Shown here: one piece after another, positions 9,263 through 48,790 of the stretch | Layout: the number at the start of each line of letters is the position of its first letter | How positions within the stretch are numbered: position 1 is the stretch's first letter | DNA from: Macrostomum lignano | Lineage: Eukaryota | Direction of reading: 5' to 3' | NCBI GenBank assembly: GCA_002269645.1 | Contig: NIVC01001353.1 | Coordinates: 62,001-126,000 of the forward strand | Length of the DNA stretch: 64,000 nt | Notes under the pieces: model-generated | Database searches by the model: none | The model's input: the letters and a program-made list of their open reading frames with translations, nothing else | Told to the model about the DNA's origin: nothing | Position numbers and translations under genes: made by a program

Positions 9263-10369
9263 GGACGATGGCTGAATTGTTGGGGGGGGGGTGTTAGGTT
9301 GTTAGGCGATTGTCAGATAGTCAGGTAGTACGGCTCAAGTAGCTCATGTAATTCAGATAATGAAAAAGTACACACAAGTGATGCTGATTTCTGCTAATAG
9401 AAAATACCAGCGCATTCATTAAAGGTTTGATCCTTTGATTTAGGCTAATATAGAGAGAGGGTCTAAGGGCGTCAGGGATTTGCATATTGAGCTCCTGCTG
9501 CGGATCAGAATATGCCCCGGCCATTGACAATATCTATCAAGAGTTTGTTCTTGAAAGGATAAGCACTATTTGCTGATTTAGAAAGGGTTTTGGGCTGATG
9601 AAGGAAACTTTTTTGGCTAATGAAAGTTTGGATTAATGGCAATTTATTTCTGCCAAAATGAGAAAAGGTAATTTTTGATTAATGGAAATCAATATTTTGG
9701 ACGATTATAGTAAAGTTACTCTTGTGCAAAAATAAAAACCAATTGATGTCATTTTCAGGGCTCCCCAGCGGGGGGCTAAATGGCTAGTCCTATATACTAA
9801 AAATGAAATGTGTGTCTCTGTGAGATAGATTTCAGAAAAAACGGCTTAACCGATTTTCTTCAAACTTGCACCATTCGATCAGAAATTTTCCTGGGACGGT
9901 ACATGCATCTTGGCTAAGAAATTGCTCAATGTTAAAGGGATTAAATATTCGAAAAACATGCTTTTTTGCAAAGGTCAAGCAGCTCTTTCGACCTGAAATG
10001 CATTGTAAGAATGCTAGAGAAAAAACTGACTGACTGAATTCTGATTCTGACAAAGATTGCATCACAACAAGTTGAAAACAGTGCCGAAGAAATGCACACA
10101 CGACTTGAATGAAATTGCGTAACCATATTGGCAACTTAAATTGAGACTGATTCTGGCTGACTGAGAAATTGATTATGTCATAACTTTTTACTCCAATTGA
10201 CTTGCTGTAAGAATTGAATTATAAGGGCCACAATTTATGTTCTCCAATTGAAAAAGATAGCCCAGATGCGAACAGACTGGAATGCTAATGTAGCGACTTG
10301 GGTTCGAATCTTAGTAGGGCAAAAAAGATTTTTTTTTATTAAAACACCTTAAAAACACAAAACTTCTAA

Positions 10370-12990
10370 ACATAAAAGAAGCGCAATGTCAAACATAGAA
10401 GAGCCACCATGTCGAACATAAAAGAGCTAACATATCGAATATTAAAGAGCCACCATGTCAAACCTAAACGAGCCACCATGTCTAATATTTAAGAGGCACC
10501 ATATAAAACATATAAGTGACTTTATGTCAAACATAAAAGAGCCACCATTTCTAACATTAAACAGCCACCATTTCGAACATTAAAGAGCCACCATGTCGAA
10601 AATAAAAGAGTCACTATTTCGAACATCAAAGAGCCACTATGTCAAACATTTAGGAGCCACTTTTTCGAACATTAAAGAGCCACCATGTCAAACATAAAAG
10701 AGCCAACATGTCAAACATAAAAGAGCCAACATGTCAAACATAAAGAGCCACCATGTCAAACATTTAAGAGCCACCATGTCAAACATATATGTGACTTTGT
10801 GTTAAACATTAAAGAGCCACCATTTCGAACATTAAAGAGCCACCATGTCAAACATGAAAGAGCTATAACATGAAGAATATTAAAGAGCCACCATGTCGAA
10901 CATAAAAGAGCTGCCATGTAAAATAACAAAGAGCTACCAAGTTAAACATAAAAGAGCCACCATGTAAAACATTAAAGAGCCACCATGTGAAACATTAAAG
11001 AGCCACATTGTCAAACCTAGAAGAGCCACCATGTCGAACATAACAGAGCTACCATGTCAAACATTAAAGAGCCACCATGTCAAACATTCAAAAGTTACAT
11101 TGTCAAACATTGAAGAGCCACTATGTCAAACATTTAGGAGCCACTTTGTCGAACATTAAAGAGCCAACATGTCAGACATTAAAAAAGCCACCGTATTAAA
11201 TAAAAAGAGTTAACATGTAGAACAAAAAAGAGCCACCATTTCGAACATAAAAGAGCCAACATGTCAAACATAAAGAGCCACCATGTCAAACATTTAAGAG
11301 CCACCATGTCAAACATATATGTGACTTTATGTCAAACATTAAAGAGCCACCATTTCGGACATAACAGAGCTACCATGTAAAACATTAAAGAGCCACCATG
11401 TCAAACATTAAAGAGCCACCATGTCGAACATAAAAGAGCCACCATGTCAAACCTAAAAGAGCCACCATGTCGAAAATAAAAGAGCCACTATTTCGAACAT
11501 TAAAGAGCCACCATTTCGAACATTAAAGAGCCACCATGTCGACCATAAAAGAGCCACTATTTCGAACATTAAATATCCACCATGTCAAACATAAAAGAGC
11601 CAACATGTCAAACATAAAAGAGCCAACATGTCAAACATAAAGAGCCACCATGTCGAAAATGAAAGAGCCACTATTTCGAACATTAAAGAGCCACCATTTC
11701 GAACATTAAAGAGCCACCATGTCGACCATAAAAGAGCCACCATGTCAAACATGAAAGAGCTATAACATGAAGAATATTAAAGAGCCACCATGTCGAAAAT
11801 TAAAGAGCCACCATGTCGAACATTTAAGAGCCACCATGTTAAACCTAAAAGAGCCACCATGTTAAACCTAAAAGAGCCACCATGTTAAACCTAAAAGAGC
11901 CACCATGTTAAACCTAAAAGAGCCACCATGTCAAACCTAAAAGAGCCACCATTTCGAACATATAAGTGACTTTATGTCAAACATTAAAGAGCCACCATGT
12001 CAAACATTAAAGAGCCACCATGTAAAACAAAAGAGCCACCATTTCGAACATTAAAGAGCCACCATGTCAAACATTTAAGAGCCACCATGTTAAACATAAA
12101 AGAGCCACTATGTTGAACATTAAACAGCCATCATGTCAAACCTAAAAGATCCACAATTTCGAACACTTAAGAGCCACAATGTAGAATATTAAAGAGCTAC
12201 CATGTCAAACATTTAAGAGCCACCATGTCAAACATTTAAGAGCCACCACGTAAAACATTAAAGAGCCACCATTTGAAACATTAAAGAGTCACCATGTCAA
12301 ACATTTAAGAGCCACCATGTCAAACATTTAAGAGCCACCATGTCAAACCTAAAAGAGCCACCATGTCAAACCTAAAAGAGCCACCATGTCGAACATAAAA
12401 GAGCCACCATGTCAAACCTAAAAGAGCCACCATGTCGAACATAAAAGAGCTATACCATAAAAAAAATTAAAGAGCCACTATCTCGAACATTAAAGAGCCA
12501 CCATGTCAAACATTTAAGAGCCACCATGTCAAACATTTAAGAGCCACCATGTCAAACCTAAAAGAGCCACCATGTCAAACCTAAAAGAGCCACCATGTCA
12601 AACCTAAAAGAGCCACCATGTCGAACATAAAAGAGCTATACCATGAAAAACATTAAAGAGCCACTTTCTCGAACATTAAGGAGCCACCATGTCAAACATT
12701 TAAAAGCCACCTTGTCAAACATTAAATAGCCACTTTGTCGAACATTAAAGAGTCACTGTGTCAAACATAAAAGAGCCACTGTTTCAAACATAAAAGAGCC
12801 ACCAGGTTAAACATTAAAGAGCCACCATGTCAAACAATAAAGAGGCACCATGTCAAACATAAAAGAGCCACCATGTCTGACATTAAAAAGCCATCGTTTC
12901 AAACATAAAACAGTTGCCATGTAGAACTTAAAACAGCCACCATGTCAAACATAAAATTTACACAATTTCAAACATAAAAGTAAGCGAATT
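10370..12990 (+). repeat. 23-bp minisatellite (AAACATTAAAGAGCCACCATGTC), ~110 units
   Basis: Direct periodicity. Confidence 0.95.
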
Positions 12991-13470: not shown

Positions 13471-13754
13471 TGTCTTGGGATGATTTCTTTTTGCTTCCTT
13501 TGAGTATTTTGTCTGTTTTTTTTGTGAAGGCCTTTTTTGGCTATCTTTTTGTTACTTGTAGAGAACAGAGGTTCTATACAGATGTCCCCCAACGGGGGGC
13601 GAAGATTGCTAGTTAATTCTACCTGTCAAACCTTCAAGCTGGGCCCATCCTGGGCGTCCAGTCCACTGCAACGGTTGCCAAGGTGACGCGAAAACATCCG
13701 CCAAACAGGAGCCCCTCCACCCGGCCGGGAACTCAAAGCCCCATTGGCCGGCCC

Positions 13755-13800
13755 GCTCGCCCATCTCTCGCCCGCCGGGAGCTCCATAAAAGCCCCGCCT
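13755..13800 (+). promoter_or_regulatory. Candidate core promoter (TATA-like CATAAAA ~13786; reverse CCAAT at ~13743)
   Basis: About 90 bp upstream of the ATG at 13879 and conserved in the inverted copy (TTTTATG at ~26710). Confidence 0.35.
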
Positions 13801-13878
13801 CCGGCCTCGCCGGGAACTCGCGCCCCTCCAGACTCCTCAGCGACATCAGCAACCCTCCCGGCTCTCCCAGCTTCTGCA

Positions 13879-16477
13879 ATGCATTTGCCTGCACTGGTGG
13901 GTCTTCTGCTTCTTCGCGCAGTCGGTAAGTTCCTGCAGTTGTCAGGCAGAGCTCAACAACCAGTTCTGCTGTACAGCATCCCTCAGTTCTGAGCACTGCG
14001 TCTGTTTCAGCATCACTCAGTGCTGAGCACTCCGCCTGTTTCAGCATCACTCAGTACTGAGCACTCCACCTGTTTCAGCATCACTCAGTGCTGAGCACTC
14101 CGCCTGTTTCAGCATCACTCAGTGCTGAGCACTCCACCTGTTTCAGCATCACTCAGTGCTGAGCACTCCGCCTGTTTCAGCATCACTCAGTGCTGAGCAC
14201 TCCGCCTGTTTCAGCATCACTCAGTGCTGAGCACTCCGCCTGTTTCAGCATCACTCAGTGCTGAGCACTCCGCCTGTTTCAGTGGCATCAGCCTCAAGCG
14301 GCCAGGAGTTCAATTCGGTCCCCAGCCGCTCCCTGGTGCTGAACGACTCGCTCAGCGTCAGCTTGTTCAGCGAGTCCGGCATCCATTCCGATGGCGAGTG
14401 CCTGATGTGGTGCTCAGACAGAGGCTGCGCCGCTGCGGTGGTGAACATGACCAGCCGCGTCTGCCTGATGGCCGTCATCAACGATGAGTCATCGGGACAG
14501 CCGGGCCCTGACGGCAGTCACGTGACCAGGCACCTGGGCTCGCATGGTGACGCCGCGGTGACGGTGTGGACGGCGGACGACTTCGAGTCGCAGCTGCGGA
14601 GTCGGGCTTTCCAGCAGGTGTTCCGAAGTGAGTAAAGCTGACAGGTGTGAGTGAAGCTGACAGGTTTGAGTGATGCTGACAGGTGTGAGTGAAGCTGACA
14701 GGTTTGAGTGATGCTGACAGGTGTGAGTGATGCTGACAGGTGTGAGTGAAGCTGACAGGTGTGAGTGAAGCTGACAGGTGTGAGTGAAGCTGACAGGTGT
14801 GAGTGAAGCTGACAGGTGTGAGTGAAGCTGACAGGTGTGAGTGAAGCTGACAGGTGTGAGTGATGCTGACAGGTGTGAGTGAAGCTGACAGGTGTGAGTG
14901 AAGCTGACAGGTGTGAGTGATGCTGACAGGTTTGAGTGATGCTGACAGGTGTGAGTGAAGCTGACAGGTGTGAGTGAAGCTGACAGGTTTGAGTGATGCT
15001 GACAGGTGTGAGTGAAGCTGACAGGTGTGAGTGAAGCTGACAGGTGTGAGTGAAGCTGACAGGTGTGAGTGAAGCTGACAGGTGTGAGTGAAGCTGACAG
15101 GTGTGAGTGATGCTGACAGGTGTGAGTGATGCTGACAGGTATGAGTGAAGCTGACAGGTGTGAGTGATGCTGACAGGTGTGAGTGATGCTGACAGGTGTG
15201 AGTGAAGCTGACAGGTGTGAGTGATGCTGACAGGTGTGAGTGATGCTGACAGGTGTGAGTGAAGCTGACAGGTGTGAGTGAAGCTGACAGGTGTGAGTGA
15301 AGCTGACAGGTGTGAGTGAAGCTGACAGTGTGAGTGAAGCTGACAGGTGTGAGTGAAGCACATTAGTGGGTAGGGGGTTGAGTGTGGCGTGATTGGGTGC
15401 TAAAAGTGCAACGGCACCTGAGGCAGAGGCTGGCTCAGTTCGCAGAACCCGAAGCTTCGGCTCTCGCCTTTGACGCCTTCACTCCAGACAGCAGCGCAGG
15501 TCGCAGCGGCTCCGTCCAGAGCGTTGCCGTGAAGTTCGCCGGCTGCTACCGCATTGAGGCGTTCGGAGCCGCTGGGGGCAGCTCAACCAGAATTAATTCC
15601 TCCAGAGGCGCCTCTGCCGCCGGCTGCTTCAGCCTGGCCGCCGGCGCCCGGCTGGAAATTTTGGTCGGCCAGGCGGGCGGCGACTCGGCCTGCGGAGTCG
15701 GCGCTGGCGGCGGAGGCGGCAGCTTCGTGTACGTCAGCAACGGCTCGGACAGTCAGCAGTTGCTCGTGGCCGCGGGAGGTGGCGGTGGAGCCTCAAGGAT
15801 ATATGCTGGTGAGCTGATGCGAGTCCAGAAATGCGTAGAATTTTGAGTCATTTGAGCCAATCATCTTGAAGCATGCGGGCTGAGCACAGGGGATGAGAGT
15901 TGAGAATAATTAACTTCATCACAGCTTGTTGCATCGCAGATTTGAGCACAATTTCCTCTGACATTTCGCAGGCATGAATGGCAGCGGCTCTACAAGCGGC
16001 ACGAGCAGCAATCCTGGAGGCTCCAAGTACTCCGGCCCCGGTGGCGCTGGAGGACAGCCGGGCCGGGTGTCGCCCATCCGGTACACTGCACGGCCGAATG
16101 TTTCTTGCGGCGGTGCCGGCGCCGGCTGGAGCGGCTCGGCTCAGCCCAGCAGCGAGTCCTTCGTTGATCCCGGAGGTCCCGGGCTCGGCCTCGGCGACGG
16201 TTGGCTGGGCGGAGCGCGCAGCGGCTCCTGCCCGACCGGCGACGGCGGTTTCGGCGGAGGCGGCGCTGGAGGCGGCTGCTGCTTCAGGTATCCCATCGGT
16301 GCCAGCGGCGGCGGAGGCGGCTTCAGTGGAGGCGGAGCTAGCACATTTCCACGCAGCGGAGGTGGCGGCGGTGGCGGCTCCTTCTGCGGCGGCGTCGGCT
16401 GCGCCACCTCCTCTGGCGGCAACGCGGAGCGGCAGGGCCGGGTGCGGCTGAGCCGTCTGGGAGCCGCCTGTGAGTGA
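13879..16477 (+). CDS. Secreted PAN/Apple-like + ALK/LTK-type glycine-rich domain protein, copy A (~405 aa); exons 13879-13924, 14283-14627, 15488-15808, 15972-16477
   Basis: Hydrophobic leader MHLPALVGLLLLRAV. PAN-like ECLMWC..GCAAAVVN...CLM. G-rich motifs YRIEAFGAAGG, LEILVGQAGG, GGGGGSFV, LLVAAGGGGG, GDGGFGGGG, GGGGFSGG, GGGGGSF. All introns GT-AG, phase 1, frame-consistent. An in-frame alternative exon-3 acceptor lies at 15446. No TM segment or kinase domain. Confidence 0.85.
14002..14282 (+). repeat. 34-bp intronic minisatellite ending at the exon-2 acceptor (~8 units)
   Basis: Unit CATCACTCAGTGCTGAGCACTCCGCCTGTTTCAG; the last unit supplies the AG at 14281-14282. Confidence 0.95.
14628..15360 (+). 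repeat. 19-bp intronic minisatellite starting at the exon-2 donor (~38 units)
   Basis: Unit GTGAGTGAAGCTGACAGGT; the first unit is the GTGAGT donor. Confidence 0.95.
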
Positions 16478-16592
16478 GGAGCTGCTTCAGCAACATCAAA
16501 TTCAGGCAGACTCTGAAGAGCTGCTCGTTAATGAGATTTTATATCGACTTTTGATTCCCGTCTGTACGAACTTGCAACACCAGCTGATTCAG

Positions 16593-17343
16593 TGCCAACT
16601 GGCATGCCTGTGTTATTCTCTTATCAGTGTTATACTGACAACTGGCATTGCCTGTGTTATCCTCTTATCAATGTTATACTGACAACTGGCAGTGCCTGCG
16701 TTATTCTCTTATCAATGTTATATTGACAACTGGCATGCCTGTGTTATCCTCTTATCAATGTTATACTGACAACTGGCAGTGCCTGTGTTATTCTCTTATC
16801 AATATTATACTGACAACTGGCAGTGCCTGTGTTATTCTCTTATCAATATTATACTGACAACTGGCATGCCTGTGTTATTCTCTTATCAGTGTTATACTGA
16901 CAACTGGCATTGCCTGTGTTATCCTCTTATCAATGTTATACTGACAACTGGCAGTGCCTGCGTTATTCTCTTATCAATGTTATACTGACAACTGGCATGC
17001 CTGTGTTTTTCTCTTATCAGTGTTATACTGACAACTGGCAGTGCCTGTGTTATTCTCTTATCAATATTATACTGACAACTGGCAGTGCCTGTGTTATTCT
17101 CTTATCAATATTATACTGACAACTGGCACTGCCTATGTCATTCTCTTATCAATGTTATACTGACAACTGGCACTGCCTATGTCATTCTCTTATCAATATT
17201 ATACTGACAACTGGCATGCCTGTGTTATTCTCTTATCAATGTTATACTGACAACTGGCATGCCTGTGTTATTCTCTTATCAATGTTATATTGACAACTGG
17301 CATGCCTGTGTTATTCTCTTATCAATGTTATTTTGGCAACTGG
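16593..17343 (+). repeat. 43/44-bp minisatellite downstream of the copy A stop (~17 units)
   Basis: Unit ACTGACAACTGGCATGCCTGTGTTATTCTCTTATCAATGTTAT. Confidence 0.95.
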
Positions 17344-17680
17344 CTCAGCGCTATCAACCCACTGAATTGGCATTATGCTTGCTCTGCTGCTTTCTGGAGG
17401 CACCAATGTCTGCTGAGCAGAGTTATTTGACTTCGGCAAACAGGGGTCGCATGCAAAATTTTATCCTGATTTTTGCCGCCATTCGACGCCCTACTTTTTT
17501 GCGTCGTCAAACAAGGTTCGTCTCGGGTGCAAATTTATTGGCGACTGTCATTTTAGCGTCAAATTTCATTAGCAAACGGAGCTTCACTCCACTTGTTGTT
17601 TTGTTTACCCATCATACACCTGACACAGAAAACCGTCAGTGCGACTCTTGACTGCCACAAATTCACTGCCGGCGATTCAG

Positions 17681-17900
17681 GTTAGGTTTAGGTTTGTTTT
17701 AGGTTTGCTTTAGGCTTGGTTTAGGCTTGGTTTAGGTTAGGTTAAGGTTAGGTTTAGGTTTGGTTTAGGCTTGGTTTAGGTTAGGTCCACGAAAATTCAC
17801 TGCCAAACCAAACCTAAACCTAACCTAAAACTTACCTAAACCTAACTTAACCTAACCTAAATAAACCTAATCTAAACAAAACCTAAACCTAACCTAAACC
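17681..17900. repeat. Foldback of TTAGG-like repeats around a short spacer
   Basis: GGTTAGGTTT.. run at 17681-17786, spacer TCCACGAAAATTCACTGCC, complementary AAACCTAACC.. run at 17805-17900. Confidence 0.8.
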
Positions 17901-18913
17901 TTCAATACATTATTTAGAGTCCAAGCACAGCGAAGGCAGGTTGTTACGGGTGATCCCACAATCAGACCAGTTATTAAACAGCTTGTTTATGATTCAATTG
18001 GCTAATTTTGCTCAGCCGCACGGCGATCCCAGAGAAGGCCGGACCGCGGCAGCCGAAGTGCCCTACCCTACAGCGGCTTCAGGTGTACAGCCGTAGCAGA
18101 AAAAGAGTAAAAGACTCGATAGAACAAAAGGTCAAGTCAGTCGCGCAAGACAGACAGGGCGTCGGTCGGCTCGCACACAGCCAGGGCCGCGGCGGGCGCC
18201 GAACGCAGGCATCAAGGTCTCAGCTTTTGTACAACAAGGCGGACTCCATGACCACCTATAGAAGTTGCGACTCTGGGCACCGTCCGTCAAATCAGGGTCA
18301 GGGACTTCTAGTTTATACTATTCTATTTGCAGACGTCACTGGTCATGGCGGGGGCCCAGACATTCACGGCACTGCCGTTCGGAGTTGGCGGCAGTTAGGG
18401 GTGCACTTTTCCACCTGGTTCTCGTGGGTAGTCACCAACCCGTGTTGGGGATGAGGCCATCAGTGGGTCTCGGGGAGCGGAAGCTGCCGCCAGCTCGTTG
18501 TCCATGAAGCCTGGAATCCAGGTGAACTCCGGATGTTGCTGTACAGATGCAGTTGATTAAAGAGTCATTGAGGCCTCCGTCTTTGCTTTGAGGCCCGGTC
18601 ACGCCGCCGTCAGATAAGACATCACTGATGTACAGAGCCATGAATATTGGTGCACGAGTTCTGTGAGCAAAAAATTTATTCTCATTTAAAAGAGCGTTTG
18701 GAGGCGTAACCGCGCGTGAGTCCATCGGTGGTCCGGAGATGAAGCGAGTTTGGACGCTGAAGGAAATTCGTAAATATTTTAGGTCATTGAACGAGTAGAA
18801 TTCATTTGCTCCCAACACCAAAAGTTCTGTTTAGTCAGTTAATGAGGACTCATTCAGGAAAAAAGTTTCTCAGTATGCCTCCAGAGGCTTCATCTGCCTC
18901 CAGAGCGCCGACT

Positions 18914-21900
18914 TCACTTCTCTACAATGCAAAAAGTGGCAGCATGAGTGAGCGCGCCATCTTACGGATGCCTTGAACTGCGATTTGCTTACCCAAGTAG
19001 ATGACGAGCCGGTCGGCGTACTTCACGCTGGCGTCCATCTTCTCGCCCTTCTTGTCCGAGTAGTACAGCACTGGCGCCTTGCCCAACAGTCCGTTCTTAG
19101 CCCACGAGCAGTGATCCTTGTCCGTGTCGGTGATTCCCATAAAGATGACGTCGTTCGGGCAGCCTCCGTGGCTGAACGCGATGTAGAAGCTTCGCCGAAA
19201 ATCGCCCCAGCTCTCGCCGGCGATGGAGAAGCGATGGAATGTTCCCTGGCCGATCCAGTAGGGATAGGACTTGATCAGTCTGTCCTTGGAGAACCAGTTG
19301 TCCGAGGTGAGCGCCTCCGGGTTCTTGCTCACGTCGAACGTGACGCTGACGACCACCTTGTCATCTTTGCGCATCTCGGCCACGATCTTGGTGTATCCGC
19401 GGTACTTGACAATCCCCGGCAGATCGTTGAGCAGGCTGGAGCGGAACAGCGGCGGGAAACCTGAGCTGCTCGAGGCGGACGCGGCGCTGCCATCGGTCTT
19501 ATGGAATTCGGCGAACGCGTCCTTGCCGGAGTGGGCAGCGATGGTGAAGAGCAGAGCTTTGTCGGGGCCTGAAGTTCAAGGTGGAGATGATTCGGCTCTT
19601 GAAAGTCTGACACCTTCAGCTGCAATAAGCTGTTTAATTGATAAGCACTGTCCGATTCTCATTCCTAAATGCCGTTCCCATGGCGCTACAAGAGTTGCTT
19701 TAAACCAAACATTTCTTGCATACCGCCAATGCAGAAAACAAACTTTGTTCAAGACGATTGACTGTTAAAATTTTCAGACGCATTATTCTGCTGTCTAAGT
19801 GCCAATTGATAGAATGTTGAAGTTTGCAATTTTACAATAAAGTTGTATCTTAATGACTCAAAATATTTGTCACAAACCTTAGCCGAATGCTTATCACTAG
19901 TCTTCACTCTGATTTTTCAAAAAGCAGATAAAATGATGTCACTTACCGAGAATGTAAGTGAGGGATCGACTCTCTAAAATGTTTTAGATCACCAATTTTG
20001 TTTCAGTACAAAAGCAATCAGCACAAGAGATTTCAATTACAGCTCAATCGACGGTATACACAGACTTACTCAAATAGATGAAGAGCCTGTCGGCGTACTT
20101 CACGTTGCTTTCCATCTTCACGTCCTTCTTGTCCGAGTAGAACAGCACTGGCGCTTTGCCGTGCAGTCCGTTCTTCACCCATGAGCAGTGGTCCTTGTCC
20201 GAGTCGCCGAGTCCCATGAAGATGATATCGTTCGGGCAGCCTCCGTGACTGAATGCGATGTAGAAGCTTCGTCTGAACTCGCCCCAGCTCTGCCCGGCGA
20301 TGGAGAAGCGCTGGAATTTCCGTTGGTTGCTGAACTGGTAGGGATAGCTCTCCAGCAGCCGCTCGGGAGTGAACCAGTTCTCCGAGCTGATGCTGCTTGT
20401 GTTGTTCGCGACTTCGAACGTGGCGCTCGCAACCACCTGGCCGCTCTTTCGCATTTCGACCACAACCTGGCTGGATCCGAGGTCCTGAATGGCGCGCGGC
20501 ATGCTGTCGAGCAGGTAGGACCGGTAGACGGGCGGCAGGCTCTTCGGCACGGAGAAGTCCTCAGACTTGCTGCGGTACGCGCTGAGCGGATTCTGGCCCG
20601 CGTGAGCTTTGATGGTGAACAGCAGAGCTTTTCCCTGCTCTGGAAGGTGTTTGAGTTCCGCGATCCGTAATTTCTTAGAAAGCTTAGAAATCGCACTCAG
20701 CACTCGCACAGACAAAATATCACCACCTGGGCGAAAGGTAAAGAACCTTAATTTGAAGTCTAGTGAGCAGAACAGCTGTTATTCACTCCCACTCTAGTTG
20801 GGTGGGATGTTTAATTCTGCCGCATGTACTGGTAAATCAATAAATTATTTATTGCGAGTGTAGTTTTCGTAGAATTTCTATCAACTTGAGATAAGAGCTA
20901 AACAGCAAGTACTGGATGGTAATATCAACTGCAGACAGAGTGGCACAGATGTTCTACTTACCAAACATGTATGGCCGCCTGGGTTTCAGAGCTGCAATAT
21001 GTAAGTGAATTTTGCATTAATTTTAGATAAATATGCAAAGCACAGTAAATTAGGTAAAACTTCCTATCAGAATCCAGGGACTCACTCAAGTAGATGACGA
21101 ACCTATCGGCGTACTTCACGCTTTGCGAATATTTCACATTCTTCTGCTCGGAGTAGAACAGCACCGGCGGCTTGCCATCGAGTCCCTTGTACACCCAGGG
21201 GCAGCCATCGTTGGTGGAGTTGCCGATTCCCATGAAGCCGCTGTCGTTGTCGCAGCCTCCATGCTAAAACTGGTTGTAGAAGTTTCGACTCACTCCTTTG
21301 TCCCAGTTTTGTCCAACAATGGAGAACACTTCGAATTCTCCCTGCCCGATCCAGTACGGATAGGACCTGATGAGCCTGCTTTTCGAGAACCAGTTCTCCG
21401 AGTTGAGCGTCGCCAAGTCTTTGGTGGCGTTGAAGGTGGCGTTGGCGACCACAGTGTCTCCTTTGCGCATCTCGGCTACGATCTCCGAAGCGCCCATCGA
21501 CTTCACCGCCTCCGGCAGGTCGTTGAGCAGCGTGGACCGGAACAGAGTCTCGTCAGCGTAGTCCTGAGGATAGCTCTTGCGGAACTCCTCCAGGGCGTTC
21601 TTGCCGGAATGAGCATCGATGGAGAACAGCAGCACCTTTCCAGGCTCTGGAACCAAAGCGAATAATAGTATTAATATTCAGTATTTGCAGCAACGAATTT
21701 AGAAAGACCGCACTGCTATTTATTACCTTTGTCTTTCGGGAACCCGGCATCTGCAACGGGGAAATTGCAGGAGGATTTTGCATGAGGCAGCTATGATTAA
21801 TGCTTGAGTACTTGTACAAGCACCGATACGTAATTTGCCAAGCTCCAGAGTTCCACGAAGCCCTACCTGCGCCTGTTGTGAGCAGGAGAGCAAAAGCGAG

Positions 21901-21936
21901 CAGGGCGGTCCCTACCGCAGCAGTTTGGTTCGGCAT
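18914..21936 (-). CDS. Secreted protein with three tandem copies of an uncharacterised ~190-aa domain (~621 aa if intact; in-frame TAG at 21264-21266). Exons 21936-21867, 21750-21727, 21646-21086, 20991-20962, 20639-20070, 19973-19947, 19568-18993, probable 18921-18914
   Basis: Leader MPNQTAAVGTALLAFALLLTTGA. The three exons share LLF(S/T)I.AH.G, L...P, V.EMRK....V...TF, NWF...RL..SYPY, FSI.G..W, FY...HGGC.ND..FMG, C.W...GL.GK.PVL.YS, VKYADRL.IYL. All junctions GT-AG, phase 1. The last exon is tentative. Confidence 0.8.
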
Positions 21937-22040
21937 TCCTTCCGGATGCGACTTGAGTGCAGGTTGAGTCGGAACGAGCGTGGATGACGGCGGAGTTGAG
22001 ACGGTCCTCAGCGGCTCGGAGCGGCGTTTAGGGGTCCGCA

Positions 22041-22047
22041 TATATAG
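22041..22047 (-). promoter_or_regulatory. TATA box candidate for the three-domain gene
   Basis: CTATATA on the minus strand, ~105 bp upstream of the ATG at 21936, in a GC-rich context. Confidence 0.45.
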
Positions 22048-22821
22048 ACTGAGTAAGTGCCCTACTCAGCAACTTCCATGGGGTGGTGGTCAACCCCCCC
22101 CCCCCAGGTACCACCTGCCTTCATCGAACCCACAAGGCAGTGAATGCATTGAGAGACATGCAGAGCTGTAGAATTTCACTCCCAATGACTGGCATTCCAA
22201 AGACATTCGACCATTCAAAAAGTGGAAGCGGTTTGCCGTGACTCACCCTGAGAGACTTCGTTCGAGCTCGGGAGCTGCAGGCTGTCCAGTTGAGCAACTC
22301 CGACCTCCCATTGCTTGCATGCCAGCCCACTCGCAATAGCAGCACGGGTTCAACCGATAGTCCAAAAGGAGCAGCCGCGGAGCTGAACTTCTGGAATGTG
22401 TCAGGCAGGAGCAGATATTTTTTCCACCCCCATTGTCTCTTCTGCTCTCAAAAGCCGGTGAAGCTCTCGAACACACCATGCTGGTACTCGGGTGAGTTGC
22501 TGCTTCGTGACCGCTATGGGAGAGAAACCGGGATCAATAACTTTTGCGGCCATGTCTCCTGTTTAGTTCACGCTACTCCCAGAAGATCTTCAAGTCTTCA
22601 GAGAAGTACACGAGACCAACTCGTTTTAGTGGGTTCAACTTCAGTATAGAACTAGCAATTTAGCCACCCGTCGGTAGCCTGTACTATTACTCTTTCATTT
22701 CTGCCTTTGAAATTATGGCAAAATGCTTTCTCAATAGTCAGTCATGATATTTGCCTGTAAGCTAATTTAAGTTAGCCAGGTAGATATTTCGGCTTCTTTT
22801 CCGATAGAATTTGAATAATAT

Positions 22822-23035
22822 ATACCTGTTAGACAGACAGGTTTACCTGATAGACAGGCAGGTTTACCTGTTAGACAGACAGGTTTACCTGTTAGACAGG
22901 TAGGTTTACCTGTTAGACAGACAGGTTTACCTGTTAGACAGGTAGATTTACCTGTAAGACAGACAGGTTTACCTGTTAGATAGGTAGGTTTACATGTAAG
23001 ACAGGCAGATTTACCTGTTAGACAGGCAGAGTTCT
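22822..23035. repeat. 21-bp minisatellite with internal hairpin (GGTTTACCTGTTAGACAGACA)
   Basis: Direct periodicity; ACAGG-TTTA-CCTGT stem. Confidence 0.9.
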
Positions 23036-23094
23036 ACTTTGGTGTATCCTAAACTGCGCATCCATATAGCGGTACATGTCCGCTGAGAACAGAC

Positions 23095-23210
23095 TCAGAA
23101 AAAGTGCCCCAGCTGCAACGCCCGTCCGCAGTGCTGAACCAGCGATGGTTTTCACTGGCAGGCCAGGTGATTCGGGCTTGTGTTGGAGATGCGGATGCGG
23201 GTTGGAGAGG
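23095..23210 (+). mobile_element. Possible decayed RTE-clade LINE 3' fragment
   Basis: Translation LQRPSAVLNQRWFSLAGQVIRA resembles the RTE ORF2 C-terminal motif (..S..L.QRR..LAGH..R). Recognised from memory only. Confidence 0.3.
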
Positions 23211-23562
23211 ATCGAGAGTCATTTGAAAATTTGAGAAGTGATACAAAACTGGAGTTATGAAGACTTCATATTTGAAGTCATATCAAGTATTGATTTATTT
23301 TGATCAAATTACTGCATTCCTAAACAAAGTCTACACGAATAAGAAAATTCAGAAGAATAAGTCCATATTGTCTAGGTTAGGGTGGTTAGAAGCAGTTGCT
23401 CCCTGGTTTTTCAAGGTAGCGACTCCACCTCGTCCACTCTGGCCGTCGGCAGTCCCTTCAAGTCCATTGTCGGCTAAGGGCCAAACAAGACCAAGAAGAC
23501 TATTTTCACGTTTGCTTGGGTCGGTAATGAACTAAACGTATATAAACTAAATTATCATATTA

Positions 23563-26500
23563 ATAAGAGAATAACACAGGCATGCCAGTTGTCAGTATAA
23601 CACTGATAAGAGAAAAACACAGGCATGCCAGTTGTCAGTATAACACTGATAAGAGAATAACACAGGCACTGCCAGTTGTCAGTATAACATTGATAAGAGG
23701 ATAACACAGGCATGCCAGTTGTCAATATAACATTGATAAGAGAATAACACAGGCATGCCAGTTGTCAGTATAACATTGATAAGAGAATAACACAGGCATG
23801 CCAGTTGTCAGTATAACACTGATAAGAGAATAACACAGGCATGCCAGTTGGCACTGAATCAGCTGGGTGTTGCAAGTTCGCATCAGACGGGAATCAAAAG
23901 TCAATATAAAATCTCATTAACGAGCAGCTCTTCAGAGTCTGCCTGATTTTGCTGTTGCTGAAGCAGCTCGTCACTCACAGGCGGCTCCCAGACGGCTCAG
24001 CCGCACCCGGCCCTGCCGCTCCGCGTTGCCGCCAGAGGAGGTGGCGCAGCCAAAGCCGCCGCAGAAGGAGCCGCCACCGCCACCTCCGCTGCGTGGAAAT
24101 GTGCTAGCTCCGCCTCCACTGAAGCCGCCTCCGCCGCCGCCGGCACCATGGCGACGATGAACGCAGCAGCCGCCGCCAGCGCCGCCTCCGCCGAAGCCGC
24201 CGTCGCCGGTCGGGCAGGAGCCGCTGCGCGCTCCGCCCAGCCAACCGTCGCCGAGGCTGAGCCCGGGACCTCCGGGATGAAGGAAGGACTCGCTGCTGGG
24301 CTGAGCCGAGCCGCTCCAGCCGGCGCCGGCACCGCCGCAGGAATACTCCGGATAGTAAGTGTACCTGTTGGACGACACCCGGCCCGGCTGTCCGCCAGCG
24401 CCACCGGGGCCGGAGTACTTGGAGCCTCCAGGATTGCTGCTCGTGCCGCTTGTAGAGCCGCTGCCATTCATGCCTGCGAAATGTCAGAGGAAATCGCATT
24501 CAAATCTGCGATGCAACAAGCTGTGATGAAGTTAATTATTCTCAACTCTCATCCCCTGTGCTCAGCCTGCATGCTTCAAGATGATTGGCTCAAATGACTC
24601 AAACTTCTACGCATTTCTGGACTCGCATCAGCTCACCAGCATATATCCTTGAGGCTCCACCGCCACCTCCCGCGGCCACGAGCAGCTGCTGACTGTCCGA
24701 GCCGTTGCTGACGTACACGAAGCTGCCGCCTCCGCCGCCAGCGCCGGAGTCGCAGGCCGAGTCGCCGCCCGCCTGGCCGACCAAAATTTCCAGTCGGACG
24801 CCGGCGGCCAGGCTGAAGCAGCCGGCGGCAGAGGCGCCTCTGGAGGAATTAATTCTGGTTGAGCTGCCCCCAGCGGCTCCGAACGCCTCAATGCGGTAGC
24901 AGCCGGCGAACTTCACGGCAACGCTCTGGACGGAGCCGCTGCGACCTGCGCTGCTGTCTGGAGTGAAGGCGTCAAAGGCGAGAGCCGAAGCTTCGGGTTC
25001 TGCGAACTGAGCCAGCCTCTGCCTCAGGTGCCGTTGCACTTTTAGCACCCAATCACGCCACACTCAACCCCCAACCCCACTAATGTGCTTCACTCACACC
25101 TGTCAGCTTCATTCACACCTGTCAGCTTCACTCACACCTGTCAGCTTCACTCACACCTGTCAGCTTCACTCACACCTGTCAGCTTCACTCACACCTGTCA
25201 GCTTCACTCACACCTGTCAGCTTTACTCACACCTGTCAGCTTCACTCACACCTGTCAGCTTCACTCACACCTGTCAGCTTCACTCACACCTGTCAGCTTC
25301 ACTCACACATGTCAGCTTCACTCACACATGTCAGCTTCACTCACACCTGTCAGCATCACTCACACATGTCAGCTTCACTCACAACTGTCAGCTTCACTCA
25401 CACCTGTCAGCTTCACTCACACCTGTCAGCTTCACTATACACAGACAGGTGTCAGCTTCACTCACACCTGTCAGCTTCACTCACACCTGTCAGCTTCACT
25501 CACACCTGTCAGCTTCACTCACACCTGTCAGCTTCACTCACACCTGTCAGCTTCACTCACACCTGTCAGCTTCACTATACACAGACAGGTGTCAGCTTCA
25601 CTCACACCTGTCAGCTTCACTCACACCTGTCAGCTTCACTCACACCTGTCAGCTTCACTCACACCTGTCAGCTTCACTCACACCTGTCAGCTTCACTCAC
25701 ACCTGTCAGCTTCACTCACTTCGGAGCACCTGCTGGAAAGCCCGACTCCGCAGCTGCGACTCGAAGTCGTCCGCCGTCCACACCGTCACCGCGGCGTCAC
25801 CATGCGAGCCCAGGTGCCTGGTCACGTGACTGCCGTCAGGGCCCGGCTGTCCCAATGACTCATCGTTGATGACGGCCATCAGGCAGACGCGGCTGGTCAT
25901 GTTCACCACCGCAGCAGCGCAGCCTCTCCTTCGGCACCACGTCAGGCACTCGGCATCGGAGCGGAGGCCGGACTCGCTGAACAAGCTGACGCTGAGCGAG
26001 TCGTTCAGCACCAGGGAGCGGCTGGGGACCGAATTGAACTCCTGGCCGCTTGAGGCTGATGCCACTGAAACAGGCGGAGTGCTCAGCACTGAGTGATGCT
26101 GAAACAGGCGGAGTGCTCAGCACTGAGTGATGCTGAAACAGGCGGAGTGCTCAGCACTGAGTGATGCTGAAACAGGTGGAGTGCTCAGCACTGAGTGATG
26201 CTGAAACAGGTGGAGTGCTCAGCACTGAGTGATGCTGAAACAGGCGGATTGCTCAGCACTGAGTGATGCTGAAACAGGCGGAGTGCTCAGCACTGAGTGA
26301 TGCTGAAACAGGCGGAGTGCTCAGCACTAAGTGATGCTGAAACAGGCGGAGTGCTCAGCACTGAGTGATGCTGAAACAGGCGGATTGCTCAGCACTGAGT
26401 GATGCTGAAACAGGCGGAGTGCTCAGCACTGAGTGATGCTGAAACAGGCGGAGTGCTCAGCACTGAGTGATGCTGAAACAGGCGGAGTGCTCAGTACTGA

Positions 26501-26836
26501 GTGATGCTGAAACAGGCGGAGTGGTCAGTACTGAGTGATGCTGTACATCTCAGCCTGACAACTGCAGAAACTTACCGACTGCTCGAAGAAGCAGAAGGCC
26601 CATCAGTGCAGGGAAATGCATTGCAGAAGCTGGGAGAGCCGGGAGAGTTGCTGATGTCGCTGAGGAGTCTGGAGGGGCGCGAGTTCCCGGCGAGGCCGGA
26701 GGCGGGGCTTTTTATGGAGCTCCCGGCAGGCGAGAGATGGGCGAGCGTTCCGGCCAATGGGGCTTTGAGTTCCCGGCCCGTGGAGCGGCTTCTGTTTTTT
26801 TCGGCTGTTTTTGCGTCACCTTGGCAACCGCTGCAG
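23563..26836 (-). repeat. Right arm of the inverted duplication
   Basis: Contains the 43/44-bp (23563-23852), 19-bp (25086-25719) and 34-bp (26065-26543) arrays in reverse, plus gene copy B. Confidence 0.95.
23971..26621 (-). CDS. Secreted PAN/Apple-like + ALK/LTK-type glycine-rich protein, copy B (~404 aa); exons 26621-26576, 26064-25720, 24957-24637, 24473-23971
   Basis: Leader MHFPALMGLLLLRAV; same exon phases and motifs as copy A; intact ORF ending LGAACE-TGA. Confidence 0.85.
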
Positions 26837-30435: not shown

Positions 30436-31137
30436 TCAGACATCTGACTGTCTGGCGTCCCACAAGTCAAAGTCTGAGAAACTCTGCGGAAGAGCTGCGC
30501 CAAGCCGGGCTGGAATCACCAGGGCCGCCACCGGTGGCGGCTGCGGCGACTGCAGAGGCTGCTGTGGCTGTGGCGGTTGCGGCGGTTGCGGCGGTTGCGG
30601 CGGTTGCGACGGCTGCGCGGGCGAAGGCGTTGGCGCTTGGACAGCGCCGTCAGTCAGGTGCGGCGGGTCCTTGCGCGGCACGGCAATCTTGGAGAGCTGC
30701 AAGCTGCGGCGGGCCAGGGCGGCCAGCGCGTCCTGGTCGGAGCGGATGGTGTGATCCAGCCGCTGCACCTGCCGCTTGATGGAGAACTTCAGCGCGTAGT
30801 AATGCACATAGTACACCAGCAGCAGCAGGATGCCCAGCGCGATGAAGGACGAGCAGAAATAGATGGCGGGATAGTCGCCCTCCTTGAGCGACTCGATGCT
30901 GAGCAGCAGGATGAACAGGCCGAGGATGGTCATGATGATGCCCACCATGAGCTCCAGCCAGAGCGCCACGCGGCAGAAGTAGCGCCGATCGTAGCAGAGG
31001 ATCCGCTGCCTGCCGGCCGCCCTGGACGCTCGCGGAGTCCGCCGCCGGGGTGACAGCAGCCGGGCACCGGCCTCGGTGTCCTCGCTCATGCCGCAACGGA
31101 GAGCGCCGCTAGCGGCCGCGGCTGCCGCGGTCGGCAT
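30436..31137 (-). CDS. Small two-transmembrane protein with Pro/Gln-rich C-tail (233 aa; alternative Met at 31089), apparently intronless
   Basis: Two hydrophobic helices (VALWLELMVGIIMTILGLFILLLSI; AIYFCSSFIALGILLLLVYYVHYY); strong GC3 codon bias; family not recognised. Confidence 0.75.
   Translation of the reverse strand: MPTAAAAAASGALRCGMSEDTEAGARLLSPRRRTPRASRAAGRQRILCYDRRYFCRVALWLELMVGIIMTILGLFILLLSIESLKEGDYPAIYFCSSFIALGILLLLVYYVHYYALKFSIKRQVQRLDHTIRSDQDALAALARRSLQLSKIAVPRKDPPHLTDGAVQAPTPSPAQPSQPPQPPQPPQPPQPQQPLQSPQPPPVAALVIPARLGAALPQSFSDFDLWDARQSDV

Positions 31138-47699: not shown

Positions 47700-48790
<1,091 letters not shown>

What the first reader, a model, noticed from the sequence alone, without database searches (positions are those of the whole stretch)
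13666..26836. Palindromic gene pair whose coding loops are hypervariable while introns are nearly identical
Copies A and B face each other in a ~13 kb palindrome. Intron 3 (~163 nt) differs at only ~6 positions by eye, but exon 4 has two dense non-synonymous patches: SPIRYTARPNVSC vs SSNRYTYYPEYSC, and GGCC-FRYPI-GAS vs GGCC-VHRRH-GAG. Smaller patches occur in the PAN domain (GIHSDGECLMWCSDR vs GLRSDAECLTWCRRR) and exon 3 (ACGVG vs ACDSG). Cysteines and glycine tracts are invariant. Established: the ALK/LTK glycine-rich domain is a ligand-binding module with polyglycine-II helices, and PAN domains bind proteins or glycans. Inference: a secreted, kinase-free scaffold presenting Cys-anchored variable loops, like a diversified recognition, immune or mate-recognition family. 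Arm-to-arm gene conversion could homogenise everything except the selected loops. This is the strongest candidate for an undescribed system here.
Basis: partly seen in the sequence, partly recalled or inferred. Interest (0 to 1): 0.75.

Follow-up and report, generated by a model that had tools for sequence, protein, structure and literature searches.

The report
Inverted flatworm gene pair, divergent loops
Two mirror-image copies of a secreted flatworm (Macrostomum lignano) protein, built from a PAN/apple-like domain plus an ALK/LTK-type glycine-rich domain, differ mainly in five short stretches; four lie in family-variable loops and one on one face of a helix, which suggests changing binding specificity, but two sequences cannot prove a hypervariable recognition system.

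Summary
The sequence features are real. Arms 13666-17289 (+) and 23553-26836 (-) are about 95% identical around a 6.3-kb spacer. Each carries an intact 4-exon gene (432/431 aa) encoding a signal peptide, a PAN/apple-like domain, a helix and an ALK/LTK-type TNF-like/glycine-rich (TG) domain. There is no EGF, TM or kinase.

The window is Macrostomum lignano NIVC01001353.1:62001-126000. The genes belong to a multigene family so far seen only in M. lignano and known only from automatic names.

"Introns nearly identical" is overstated. Introns and flanks differ by 3.3-5.7%, against 4.5% for the CDS. What stands out is the placement of replacements: 22 of 29 cluster (p=1e-4) in five patches. There pN=0.42, about 9x the silent background of 0.047; elsewhere omega is about 0.23. 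None hits a family-conserved column. The PAN patch lies on one helix face.

Caveats:
- The exon-3 patch is one exact 6-bp micro-inversion.
- An intron carries a similar cluster.
- Internal patch omega (about 1.45) is not significant.
- The exon-4 loops are not hot in another close M. lignano paralogue set.
- 3-D co-localisation could not be tested.

Best reading: a young inverted duplicate pair diverging at binding surfaces, partly through multi-nucleotide mutations. Arm-to-arm conversion is not demonstrated. Immune or mate-recognition roles are speculation.

The parts
13666..17289 (+). Palindrome arm A (gene A, 213 bp of upstream sequence and a 3' tandem array)
   Evidence: blastn minus-strand self hits at 91.7-95.7% identity; MAFFT arm alignment
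23553..26836 (-). Palindrome arm B (gene B), inverted copy of arm A
13879..13924 (+). Gene A exon 1: start codon and signal peptide (MHLPALVGLLLLRAV.)
   Evidence: Splice model. Searches show the only hydrophobic stretch is N-terminal (top KD window at residue 1).
14283..14627 (+). Gene A exon 2: PAN/apple-like domain (residues about 31-111) and the start of the linker helix
   Evidence: The AF2 secondary structure is b-b-a-b-b-b-b at pLDDT about 80-84. A paralogue segment within the merged model P0066 passes the Pfam PAN_1 threshold.
15407..15808 (+). Gene A exon 3: linker helix and the first half of the TNF-like/glycine-rich (TG) domain
   Evidence: phmmer to LTK 7nx0 at E=3e-5 over residues 159-229.
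15972..16477 (+). Gene A exon 4: glycine-rich lattice, last TNF-like strands and stop codon
   Evidence: Family C-termini end at the same place.
26576..26621 (-). Gene B exon 1
25720..26064 (-). Gene B exon 2 (PAN/apple-like domain)
24637..25038 (-). Gene B exon 3
23971..24473 (-). Gene B exon 4 with stop codon
14381..14431 (+). PAN patch (codons 49-65; B equivalent 25966-25916). The changes are I49L, H50R, G53A, M57T, S60R and D61R, on the helix face opposite Cys55/Cys59.
   Evidence: 11 mismatches in 51 nt. All six variable residues fall within a 120-degree arc (5 of 1716 combinations). Only 1 of 10 conserved codons carries a synonymous change.
15695..15698 (+). Exon-3 patch (G227D, V228S; B equivalent 24750-24747). 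It is an exact in-place micro-inversion, GGAGTC <-> GACTCC.
   Evidence: Inverting 4-8 bp removes all 4 mismatches; the chance of this is about 0.012. The same loop varies among close M. lignano paralogues.
16073..16105 (+). Exon-4 patch a (codons 299-309, SPIRYTARPNV vs SSNRYTYYPEY; B equivalent 24372-24340). A has an N-glycosylation sequon (N307-V-S) that B lacks.
   Evidence: 14 mismatches in 33 nt (same count in the 56-nt slices). It is an insertion relative to LTK and sits in an indel-rich family loop. pLDDT dips to 77. 2 of 6 conserved codons carry synonymous changes.
16163..16166 (+). Small exon-4 patch (V329L, D330H; B equivalent 24282-24279)
16283..16304 (+). Exon-4 patch b (codons 369-376, FRYPIGAS vs VHRRHGAG; B equivalent 24162-24141), directly after Cys367-Cys368
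   Evidence: 12 mismatches in 22 nt. A gapped alignment suggests a compensated +1/-1 frameshift plus further changes. It is an insertion relative to LTK.
15946..15950 (+). Noncoding mismatch cluster in intron 3 (4 of 5 nt; B equivalent 24499-24495)
   Evidence: It shows that clustered multi-nucleotide changes also arise outside coding loops.
13974..14282 (+). Intron-1 tandem array (34-nt unit ending in the TTTCAG acceptor; 9.1 copies). The arm B counterpart is 26065-26543 with 14.1 copies.
   Evidence: TRF; alignment
14628..15359 (+). Intron-2 tandem array (19-nt unit starting with the GTGAGT donor; 38.6 copies). The arm B counterpart is 25087-25719 with 32.6 copies.
   Evidence: TRF; alignment
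16596..17344 (+). 3' tandem array (44-nt unit, 17.2 copies) forming the inner end of arm A. The arm B counterpart is 23563-23850 with 6.7 copies.
   Evidence: TRF
17345..23552 (.). Unique spacer of the palindrome. It holds three tandem copies, on the minus strand, of an unknown exon of about 195 aa: 18982-19566, 20047-20715 and 21075-21653. The third has an in-frame stop.
   Evidence: No Pfam or PDB match. The AF2 model is unusable at pLDDT 49.

Best explanation
Genes A and B are a fairly young inverted (tail-to-tail) duplicate pair in Macrostomum lignano. They belong to a multigene family so far seen only in M. lignano, of secreted proteins with no kinase: signal peptide, PAN/apple-like domain, long helix, then an ALK/LTK-type TG domain (a TNF-like beta-sandwich bearing a polyglycine-II lattice). 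Silent divergence since the duplication is about 4.7%. The scaffold has stayed under purifying selection (omega about 0.23). Amino-acid replacement has been concentrated about 9-fold above the neutral rate in five short segments: one face of the PAN helix (opposite its cysteines), one TNF-like loop and three loops between glycine-rich runs. I read this as divergence of ligand-contact surfaces between the two copies, that is, a change of binding specificity under positive or diversifying selection. The raw material is partly multi-nucleotide mutation, with one micro-inversion shown and one compensated frameshift likely. Shown: the anatomy, the fold, family membership, the clustering of replacements, and the rate excess over silent sites. 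Inferred: secretion, surface exposure of the loops, the binding function, and positive selection rather than mere tolerance. Arm-to-arm gene conversion is not required.
For: Window positions 58298-63863 are identical to NIVC01001353.1:120298-125863 of GCA_002269645.1. The fold rests on phmmer to LTK at 3e-5, an AF2 model with mean pLDDT 82 and the GRD above 90, and Foldseek to LTK/ALK TG domains at 1e-12 to 4.5e-8. For the family, 9 of the 20 closest representatives whose source was looked up are M. lignano proteins with the same PAN+GRD order. Pfam PAN_1 and ALK_LTK_GRD pass threshold in paralogues. Selection pattern: outside the patches pN is 0.008 and pS 0.035; inside pN is 0.42. The N:S contrast between patches and rest has Fisher p=0.0014. 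Patch pN is 9.0x the silent background of 0.0465 (p=4.5e-25), and each large patch is individually significant. Replacements cluster at p=1e-4. None of 28 replaced positions is at a family-conserved column, against 118 of 374 unchanged ones, and column entropy is higher at replaced positions (p=0.004). The PAN patch has helical periodicity opposite the Cys face (p=0.003), with only 1 of 10 conserved codons changed synonymously. That argues against import from a distant paralogue. Precedent: the same TNF-like + glycine-rich fold forms the receptor-binding tip of cyanophage Pam3 gp24, described as a 'conserved glycine-rich stem and hypervariable distal tip' and as similar to C. elegans ALK 7LIR (PMC9608196). 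Phage proteins are the best structural matches, some of them named virion structural or tail-fibre proteins. gp38 adhesins alternate conserved glycine-rich motifs with hypervariable segments (PMC12032242).
Against: There are only two sequences. Omega computed inside the patches is 1.45 and not significantly above 1 (p=0.18). The patches were chosen after looking at the data. The 9x excess assumes independent point mutations, yet the exon-3 patch is a single micro-inversion and patch ex4b aligns better as a compensated frameshift. Intron 3 carries a comparable 4-of-5 cluster, and the density of clusters is similar in CDS and noncoding DNA (3.9 against 3.5 per kb). Synonymous differences at conserved codons are also raised inside the patches: 3/20 against 9/373, with 2 of 6 in patch ex4a. 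That points to a mutational, older-divergence or conversion component. In other close M. lignano paralogue sets the exon-4 loops and the PAN helix are not variable. No expression, ligand or 3-D mapping data are available.
Confidence: 0.5

Rival explanations
1. Neutral tolerance. The patches are simply the only places where the scaffold tolerates change. Complex multi-nucleotide mutations (micro-inversions, template switches, small compensating indels) occur all along the arms and survive in loops. No adaptive diversification is involved.
For: The micro-inversion fully explains the exon-3 patch. There is a noncoding cluster at 15946-15950, and cluster density is similar in CDS and noncoding DNA. 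Patch omega of 1.45 is not above 1. All changes fall at family-variable, indel-rich columns. The same loops are not recurrently variable in another close paralogue set.
Against: The coding patches are much larger than the noncoding clusters: 11-14 mismatches over 22-51 nt against 3-4 over 4-5 nt. The PAN patch consists of separate single changes spaced with helical periodicity, not one block. Exon 2 has only 1/59 four-fold sites changed. Even fully neutral point substitution at 4.7% cannot give pN of 0.29-0.53.
Confidence: 0.27
2. Conversion mosaic, which is the first reader's mechanism or a variant of it. Either the arms are old and are repeatedly homogenised by arm-to-arm gene conversion except where selection keeps the loops different, or the loop cassettes were imported from other paralogues by short conversion tracts seeded in the conserved Gly-coding DNA. 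The second variant parallels what has been proposed for phage gp38 glycine-rich motifs.
For: Silent divergence is lower in exons 2-3 (2/137) than in the rest (37/688), p=0.048. There are mismatch-free runs of 275 bp and more. Synonymous differences are raised inside the patches, especially ex4a with 2 of 6. Every GRD patch is flanked by conserved GGN-rich DNA. Glycine-rich motifs have been proposed as recombination hotspots in gp38 (PMC12032242).
Against: Arm identity is only about 95%, and the introns are as diverged as the CDS, so there is no sign of ongoing homogenisation. Tandem-array copy numbers differ strongly between the arms. No donor for any patch exists in the 64-kb window; the best exact matches of 9-14 nt are about what chance would give in 128 kb. 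The only paralogue locus available (L001) shares just two short blastn matches with the window, both in exons 2-3, and none in exon 4. The PAN patch lacks the synonymous changes expected from a diverged donor.
Confidence: 0.17
3. Assembly artefact. The inverted arrangement or the patch differences come from mis-joined haplotypes or homeologues of this hidden-polyploid genome, or from long-read consensus errors.
For: M. lignano is a hidden polyploid (PMC10468722 abstract). The region is packed with tandem arrays. No reads could be inspected.
Against: The arms are 5% diverged and separated by 6.3 kb of unique, gene-bearing spacer. That is unlike fold-back artefacts. Both ORFs are intact, all patches preserve the frame and every Cys, and consensus errors do not produce dense in-frame substitutions. 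Even if the copies were alleles or homeologues, the patch pattern would remain.
Confidence: 0.06

Closest known systems
ALK/LTK receptor tyrosine kinase ligand-binding TG supradomain (TNF-like + glycine-rich; PDB 7NX1, 7NX0, 7N00, 7LIR; Pfam PF12810)
   Same: The fold is the same: Foldseek E=1e-12, TM normalised to target 0.66, and phmmer to LTK at 3e-5. The conserved motifs match too: (G)CYRIEA-GA-GG, ILVGQ-G, GGGGGSFVY, AAGGGGG, GGFGGGG, GGGG(F/Y)SGGG.
   Different: There is no EGF-like module, transmembrane segment or kinase. The protein ends 4 residues after the last strand. An N-terminal PAN/apple-like domain takes the place of the MAM/LDLa modules. Loops ex4a and ex4b are insertions relative to LTK. 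A and B themselves do not reach any Pfam threshold.
Automatically annotated M. lignano PAN+GRD proteins (e.g. PAA78312.1 / A0A267FZB5 'Apple domain-containing protein', A0A1I8GEH1 'PE-PGRS family protein', A0A1I8GEQ5 'receptor protein-tyrosine kinase')
   Same: They come from the same genome and have the same domain order and exon structure. Identity to A is 39-56%.
   Different: A and B were not found as such in the protein collections searched. The paralogue locus L001 is single-copy with no palindrome within 10 kb and no intronic tandem arrays. Many UniProt models are truncated or fused to neighbouring genes such as IFT140, EF-hand and TPR proteins, so their names mislead. No paper on the family was found.
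Phage tail-fibre tips with a glycine-rich domain: cyanophage Pam3 gp24 (TNF-like + glycine-rich) and T-even/S16 gp38 adhesins
   Same: A conserved glycine-rich scaffold carries variable loops that set receptor specificity (PMC9608196; PMC12032242). BFVD phage proteins are the best structural matches to the model, at E=1e-15 to 1e-13 and 28-31% identity.
   Different: Those are viral, partly trimeric, and attached to fibres. Here the protein is animal, monomeric as far as known, and PAN-fused. Hypervariability is shown across many phages but only between two copies here. This is an analogy of mechanism; any homology lies deep in the GRD superfamily and is not family membership.
Large genomic palindromes maintained by arm-to-arm gene conversion (e.g. 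primate Y-chromosome ampliconic palindromes; from my own knowledge)
   Same: Inverted arms carry a gene pair around a unique spacer.
   Different: Arm identity is about 95% rather than above 99.9%. The arms are only about 3.3-3.6 kb. Evidence for conversion is marginal (p=0.048).

Membership tests
ALK/LTK-type glycine-rich (TG) domain superfamily (PF12810) | TNF-like beta-sandwich bracing a polyglycine-II lattice (the fold) | tested here: met
   In the AF2 model the GRD has pLDDT above 90. Foldseek hits LTK 7nx1 at E=1e-12 and ALK 7nx3, 7mzy and 7n00, with 7lir at 3.7e-8.
ALK/LTK-type glycine-rich (TG) domain superfamily (PF12810) | Sequence match to the Pfam model above its gathering score | tested here: inconclusive
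   A and B give no Pfam hit at E<=0.01. Paralogues do: P0223 scores 26.8 against a cutoff of 24.5 and P0066 scores 42.7, while P0001 at 23.8 falls just below. phmmer of A against the LTK chain gives 3e-5.
ALK/LTK receptor tyrosine kinases | EGF-like module, transmembrane helix and tyrosine-kinase domain after the GRD | tested here: not met
   The stop codon at 16475-16477 lies 4 residues after the last strand. Family C-termini coincide. There is no hydrophobic segment other than the signal peptide. Only two GRD copies exist in the window, and nothing kinase-like lies downstream.
PAN/apple domain (PF00024 and relatives) | Profile match | tested here: inconclusive
   A, B and P0213 give no Pfam hit. 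A homologous segment within the merged model P0066 passes PAN_1 at 23.5 against a cutoff of 21.4. UniProt names several paralogues 'Apple domain-containing'.
PAN/apple domain (PF00024 and relatives) | A beta-sheet cradling one alpha-helix that is tied to it by disulfides | tested here: inconclusive
   The AF2 secondary structure is E31-36, E39-47, H52-62, E66-70, E75-83, E95-99, E107-111 at pLDDT about 80-84 up to residue 80 and about 60 beyond. There are four Cys, two of them in the helix at i and i+4. Disulfides and fold superposition could not be checked because no coordinates are returned.
Gene-conversion-maintained palindrome | Near-identity of arms and detectable conversion tracts | tested here: not met
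   The arms are about 95% identical and the introns 3.3-5.6% diverged. Tandem-array copy numbers differ. The only signal is marginal heterogeneity of silent divergence (p=0.048).
Diversified (hypervariable-loop) recognition families | Conserved scaffold with variation confined to loops | tested here: met
   None of 28 replacements is at a conserved column, and the patches fall in indel-rich family loops.
Diversified (hypervariable-loop) recognition families | dN/dS above 1 in the loops across many members | tested here: inconclusive
   For the pair, patch pN/pS is 1.45 (p=0.18), although pN is 9x the silent background. Among close M. lignano paralogue sets only the exon-3 loop is recurrently variable. 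No DNA is available for other members except L001.
Diversified (hypervariable-loop) recognition families | Variable loops form one contiguous exposed surface | not testable with these tools
   Structure prediction returns no coordinates. The only indirect hints are that Cys310 and Cys367 co-occur only in A, B and P0213, and that both are isolated bridge residues in the DSSP string.

The most novel reading that the evidence does not exclude
The M. lignano PAN+TG family would be a germline-encoded, diversified recognition repertoire (self/non-self, microbe, sperm or partner recognition). It would use the polyglycine-II lattice as a rigid scaffold for disulfide-linked variable tip loops, making it an animal counterpart of phage tail-fibre adhesins. 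New loop variants would arise by complex local mutation, or by cassette exchange seeded in the conserved Gly-coding DNA, and would be kept apart in inverted gene pairs.
Probability: 0.12. Interest if true: 0.8.

Novelty: new variant of a known kind. Interest (0 to 1): 0.45.

Why it matters
The ALK/LTK glycine-rich fold is known in animals essentially as the cytokine-binding module of one receptor-kinase family, and in phages as a receptor-binding tip. A secreted, PAN-fused, multi-copy version in a flatworm shows that animals also deploy this scaffold as a free binding protein. Recent copies differ almost only in family-variable loops and on one face of the PAN helix. If the loop divergence proves adaptive, it gives a compact model for how specificity evolves on a polyglycine-II scaffold, and a candidate recognition family in a regeneration and sexual-conflict model organism. 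The locus is also a clean example of multi-nucleotide mutations, here an exact micro-inversion, mimicking 'dense non-synonymous patches'. That matters for dN/dS-based scans.

Tried and rejected
1. Pfam on A, B and the spacer ORFs gave no hits.
2. A word-indexed homology search with the PAN and N-terminal GRD part gave 0 hits. The three word-indexed searches were saturated by poly-Gly words. The exhaustive representative search found the family.
3. I first inferred that the window was a Macrostomum species other than M. lignano, from 82% nucleotide identity to L001. That was wrong. The LRR gene look-up shows the window is M. lignano itself, and L001 is a paralogue.
4. Look-ups by exact sequence failed. 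Both exon-4 ORFs and ORF 30436-31137 are not on record. The genome's own annotation of A and B, and further copies, could therefore not be retrieved.
5. A donor or template search for each patch version over the whole window, both strands, found only 9-14-nt matches far away, about what chance would give. This gives no support for a local template repeat, so a DGR-like or cassette mechanism within the window is rejected.
6. In-place inversion explains only the exon-3 patch. It removes at most 1-3 mismatches in the three large coding patches and 2 of 4 in the intron-3 cluster.
7. Within-cluster variable sites of M. lignano paralogues do not overlap the A/B sites overall (3 of 11, p=0.95). The exception is the exon-3 loop.
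8. The AF2 model of the spacer protein has pLDDT 49 and is unusable, so no fold search was run on it.
9. tblastn of the spacer protein against L001 found nothing, so there is no synteny with the paralogue locus.
10. Literature searches for the family (Macrostomum with glycine-rich/ALK, apple/PAN domain or PE-PGRS, and Mlig009354) found nothing relevant. One query was malformed and one was uninformative. The primary ALK structure paper tried by DOI (Li et al. 2021) is not held, so the ALK ligand-contact residues could not be mapped.

Full report
**1. What is in the sequence**

A minus-strand self-comparison shows one inverted repeat. Arm A is 13666-17289 and arm B is 23553-26836, at 91.7-95.7% identity, around a unique spacer of about 6.3 kb. 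No other copy exists in the 64-kb window.

Each arm carries an intact four-exon gene.
- Gene A (+): 13879-13924, 14283-14627, 15407-15808, 15972-16477 (432 aa).
- Gene B (-): 26621-26576, 26064-25720, 25038-24637, 24473-23971 (431 aa).
- All introns are GT..AG and phase 1.
- The genes are convergent, with their 3' ends towards the spacer.

Introns 1 and 2 and the 3' flank are filled with tandem arrays of 34-, 19- and 44-nt units. Copy numbers differ between the arms: 9.1 vs 14.1, 38.6 vs 32.6, and 17.2 vs 6.7.

**2. Where the window comes from**

The 521-aa LRR gene at 60298-61863 is an annotated gene on Macrostomum lignano contig NIVC01001353.1 (GCA_002269645.1). The fetched locus is base-for-base identical to window 58298-63863. 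The window is therefore NIVC01001353.1:62001-126000. My earlier guess of "another Macrostomum species" was wrong.

**3. What the protein is**

- The only hydrophobic segment is the N-terminal signal-like peptide.
- phmmer finds the LTK and ALK ectodomains (3e-5 to 7.5e-3).
- An AlphaFold model built on a 57-sequence alignment has mean pLDDT 82, and above 90 through the glycine-rich part.
- Foldseek places the model on the LTK/ALK TG domains (1e-12 to 4.5e-8, including C. elegans 7LIR) and on nothing else in the PDB.
- Residues 31-111 are predicted as b-b-a-b-b-b-b with two Cys in the helix. A homologous segment in the merged paralogue model P0066 passes Pfam PAN_1.
- A long helix (113-142) links the two domains.
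- The protein stops four residues after the last strand, exactly where its relatives stop. There is no EGF module, transmembrane segment or kinase.

**4. The family**

The exhaustive search of 1.84 billion representatives gave 1148 hits. Of the 20 best-scoring representatives whose source was looked up, 9 are M. lignano proteins, and only M. lignano hits also cover the PAN part. Their automatic names include 'Apple domain-containing', 'receptor protein-tyrosine kinase' and 'PE-PGRS family protein'. Others are named after fused neighbours such as Calmodulin or Kinesin light chain, because many gene models are truncated or merged.

At least a dozen lineages at 56% identity or less to A exist in this genome. 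The closest full-length paralogue, PAA78312.1 (54% identical), lies on another contig as a single gene, without a palindrome or intronic arrays. The nearest non-flatworm GRD relatives identified are choanoflagellate multi-GRD proteins. No paper on the family was found.

**5. Checking the observation**

The quoted peptides are exact, and intron 3 is 163 nt with 6 mismatches. The headline contrast does not hold.

| Region | Mismatch |
|---|---|
| 5' flank | 5.7% |
| Intron 1 | 5.6% |
| Intron 2 | 3.3% |
| Intron 3 | 3.7% |
| 3' flank | 4.1% |
| Whole CDS | 4.5% |
| Non-tandem noncoding | 5.1% |

Whole-gene dN/dS is 0.79. What is unusual is where the replacements fall.
- 22 of 29 replaced codons lie within 3 codons of another (p=1e-4). 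Synonymous changes are not clustered.
- Outside five patches (codons 49-61, 227-228, 299-309, 329-330, 369-376), pN=0.008 and pS=0.035. Inside, pN=0.42. The N:S contrast has p=0.0014.
- Against the silent background of 0.0465 (noncoding plus four-fold sites), patch pN is 9-fold higher (p=4.5e-25). Each large patch is individually significant.
- None of 28 replaced positions is at a family-conserved column, against 118 of 374 unchanged ones.
- The GRD patches coincide with the indel-rich loops of the family. Two of them are insertions relative to LTK.
- The six PAN replacements lie within a 120-degree arc of helix 52-62, opposite Cys55/Cys59 (5 of 1716 combinations).

**6. What weakens a pure selection reading**

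(a) The exon-3 patch (GV vs DS) is exactly the reverse complement in place, GGAGTC <-> GACTCC. It lies next to an upstream CGACTC that forms a hairpin in A and a direct repeat in B. It is one micro-inversion or template-switch event, not four substitutions.

(b) Patch ex4b aligns better as a +1/-1 compensated frameshift plus further changes.

(c) Intron 3 carries a 4-of-5 mismatch cluster. Clusters of 3 or more mismatches are as frequent per kb in noncoding DNA (3.5) as in the CDS (3.9), although the coding ones are larger.

(d) Synonymous differences at conserved codons are raised inside the patches (3/20 vs 9/373), mostly in patch ex4a. The PAN patch shows only 1 of 10.

(e) Omega computed within the patches is 1.45, with p=0.18.

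(f) Among other 90%-identity paralogue sets of M. lignano, the exon-3 loop is again variable: DGN/NGD/NVD/VGN, and LDY vs LSGE. The PAN helix and the exon-4 loops are not.

**7. Gene conversion**

The arms are only about 95% alike, with diverged introns and different array lengths. The only hint is lower silent divergence in exons 2-3 (2/137 vs 37/688, p=0.048). No donor for any patch exists in the window. The one paralogue locus available is too diverged to act as a donor.

**8. Mechanism and analogies**

I favour divergence of binding surfaces between two young paralogues, at confidence 0.5. The scaffold is under constraint, while the exposed helix face and the loops change about 9x faster than neutral. 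The change is partly fed by multi-nucleotide mutations.

The TG fold has a direct precedent as a scaffold for variable tips. Cyanophage Pam3 gp24 has the same TNF-like + glycine-rich architecture. [quoted passage not shown] Phage proteins, including virion and tail-fibre proteins, are the best structural matches to the model in BFVD.

The rivals are neutral tolerance plus complex mutation (0.27), a conversion mosaic (0.17) and assembly artefact (0.06).

**9. What could not be tested**

- Spatial co-localisation of the patches, because no coordinates are returned.
- Family-wide codon models, because no paralogue DNA is available beyond L001.
- Read support for the assembly.
- Expression.

A Cys310-Cys367 link between the two exon-4 loops is suggested only by two indirect observations. 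The two cysteines co-occur in A, B and P0213 alone, and both are isolated bridge residues in the model.

**10. Verdict**

This is a new variant of a known kind: a secreted PAN+TG family containing a recently duplicated, loop-diverged inverted pair. It is not yet a demonstrated hypervariable recognition system. Interest 0.45.

Noticed in passing
window 13974-14282 and 14628-15359 (arm B: 26065-26543 and 25087-25719): Exon 2, the PAN exon, is bracketed by tandem arrays built from its own splice signals. Every 34-nt intron-1 unit ends in the ..CCTGTTTCAG acceptor motif, and every 19-nt intron-2 unit begins with the GTGAGT donor. That gives dozens of potential cryptic splice sites. The paralogue gene in L001 has no such arrays.
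   Followed up: partly
window 15679-15703 (arm B 24766-24742): An exact 6-bp in-place inversion (GGAGTC/GACTCC) lies inside a coding exon. It turns an inverted repeat with the upstream CGACTC into a direct repeat and changes two residues (GV to DS). It is a textbook template-switch or micro-inversion that looks like four adjacent substitutions.
   Followed up: yes
window 18982-19566, 20047-20715, 21075-21653 (minus strand): The palindrome spacer holds three tandem paralogues (49-67% identical) of an unknown exon of about 195 aa, with motifs FYIAFSHGGCPND and VKYADR. The third copy has an in-frame stop. There is no Pfam or PDB match and no homologue in the paralogue locus L001. The AF2 model is unusable at pLDDT 49.
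   Followed up: partly
window 17670-17786 and 17805-17901: Two head-to-head arrays of degenerate telomere-like repeats (GGTTTAGGTTAGG... facing ...CCTAACCTAAACC) are separated by about 20 bp. Each follows a copy of the short motif AATTCACTGCC. This may be a fold-back element or an interstitial telomere-like relic just inside the spacer.
   Followed up: no
whole window, e.g. 1663-4140, 10368-12956, 32882-33981, 35971-37373, 47701-48801, 49782-51217, 54021-56422: The window is unusually dense in long minisatellite arrays with units of 4-44 nt and up to 274 copies. Many of them create long spurious ORFs on both strands.
   Followed up: partly
window 60298-61863 (+): A single-exon 521-aa leucine-rich-repeat protein (Pfam LRR_8) has a signal-like N-terminus and a C-terminal hydrophobic segment. 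It matches an annotated gene on NIVC01001353.1 exactly, which identified the source of the window.
   Followed up: yes
UniProt M. lignano models P0066, P0069, P0073, P0075 (not in the window): Several family members are merged with unrelated neighbours (IFT140 beta-propellers, EF-hands, TPR repeats) or truncated after exon 3. Their database names, such as 'Calmodulin', 'Kinesin light chain', 'Myosin motor domain-containing' and 'receptor protein-tyrosine kinase', do not describe them.
   Followed up: partly
gene A codon 307-309 (window 16097-16105) vs gene B: Copy A has an extra N-glycosylation sequon (N-V-S) inside patch ex4a, which B lacks (E-Y-S). B's patches are also more basic: S60R, D61R, H50R, and FRYPI changed to VHRRH.
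   Followed up: no
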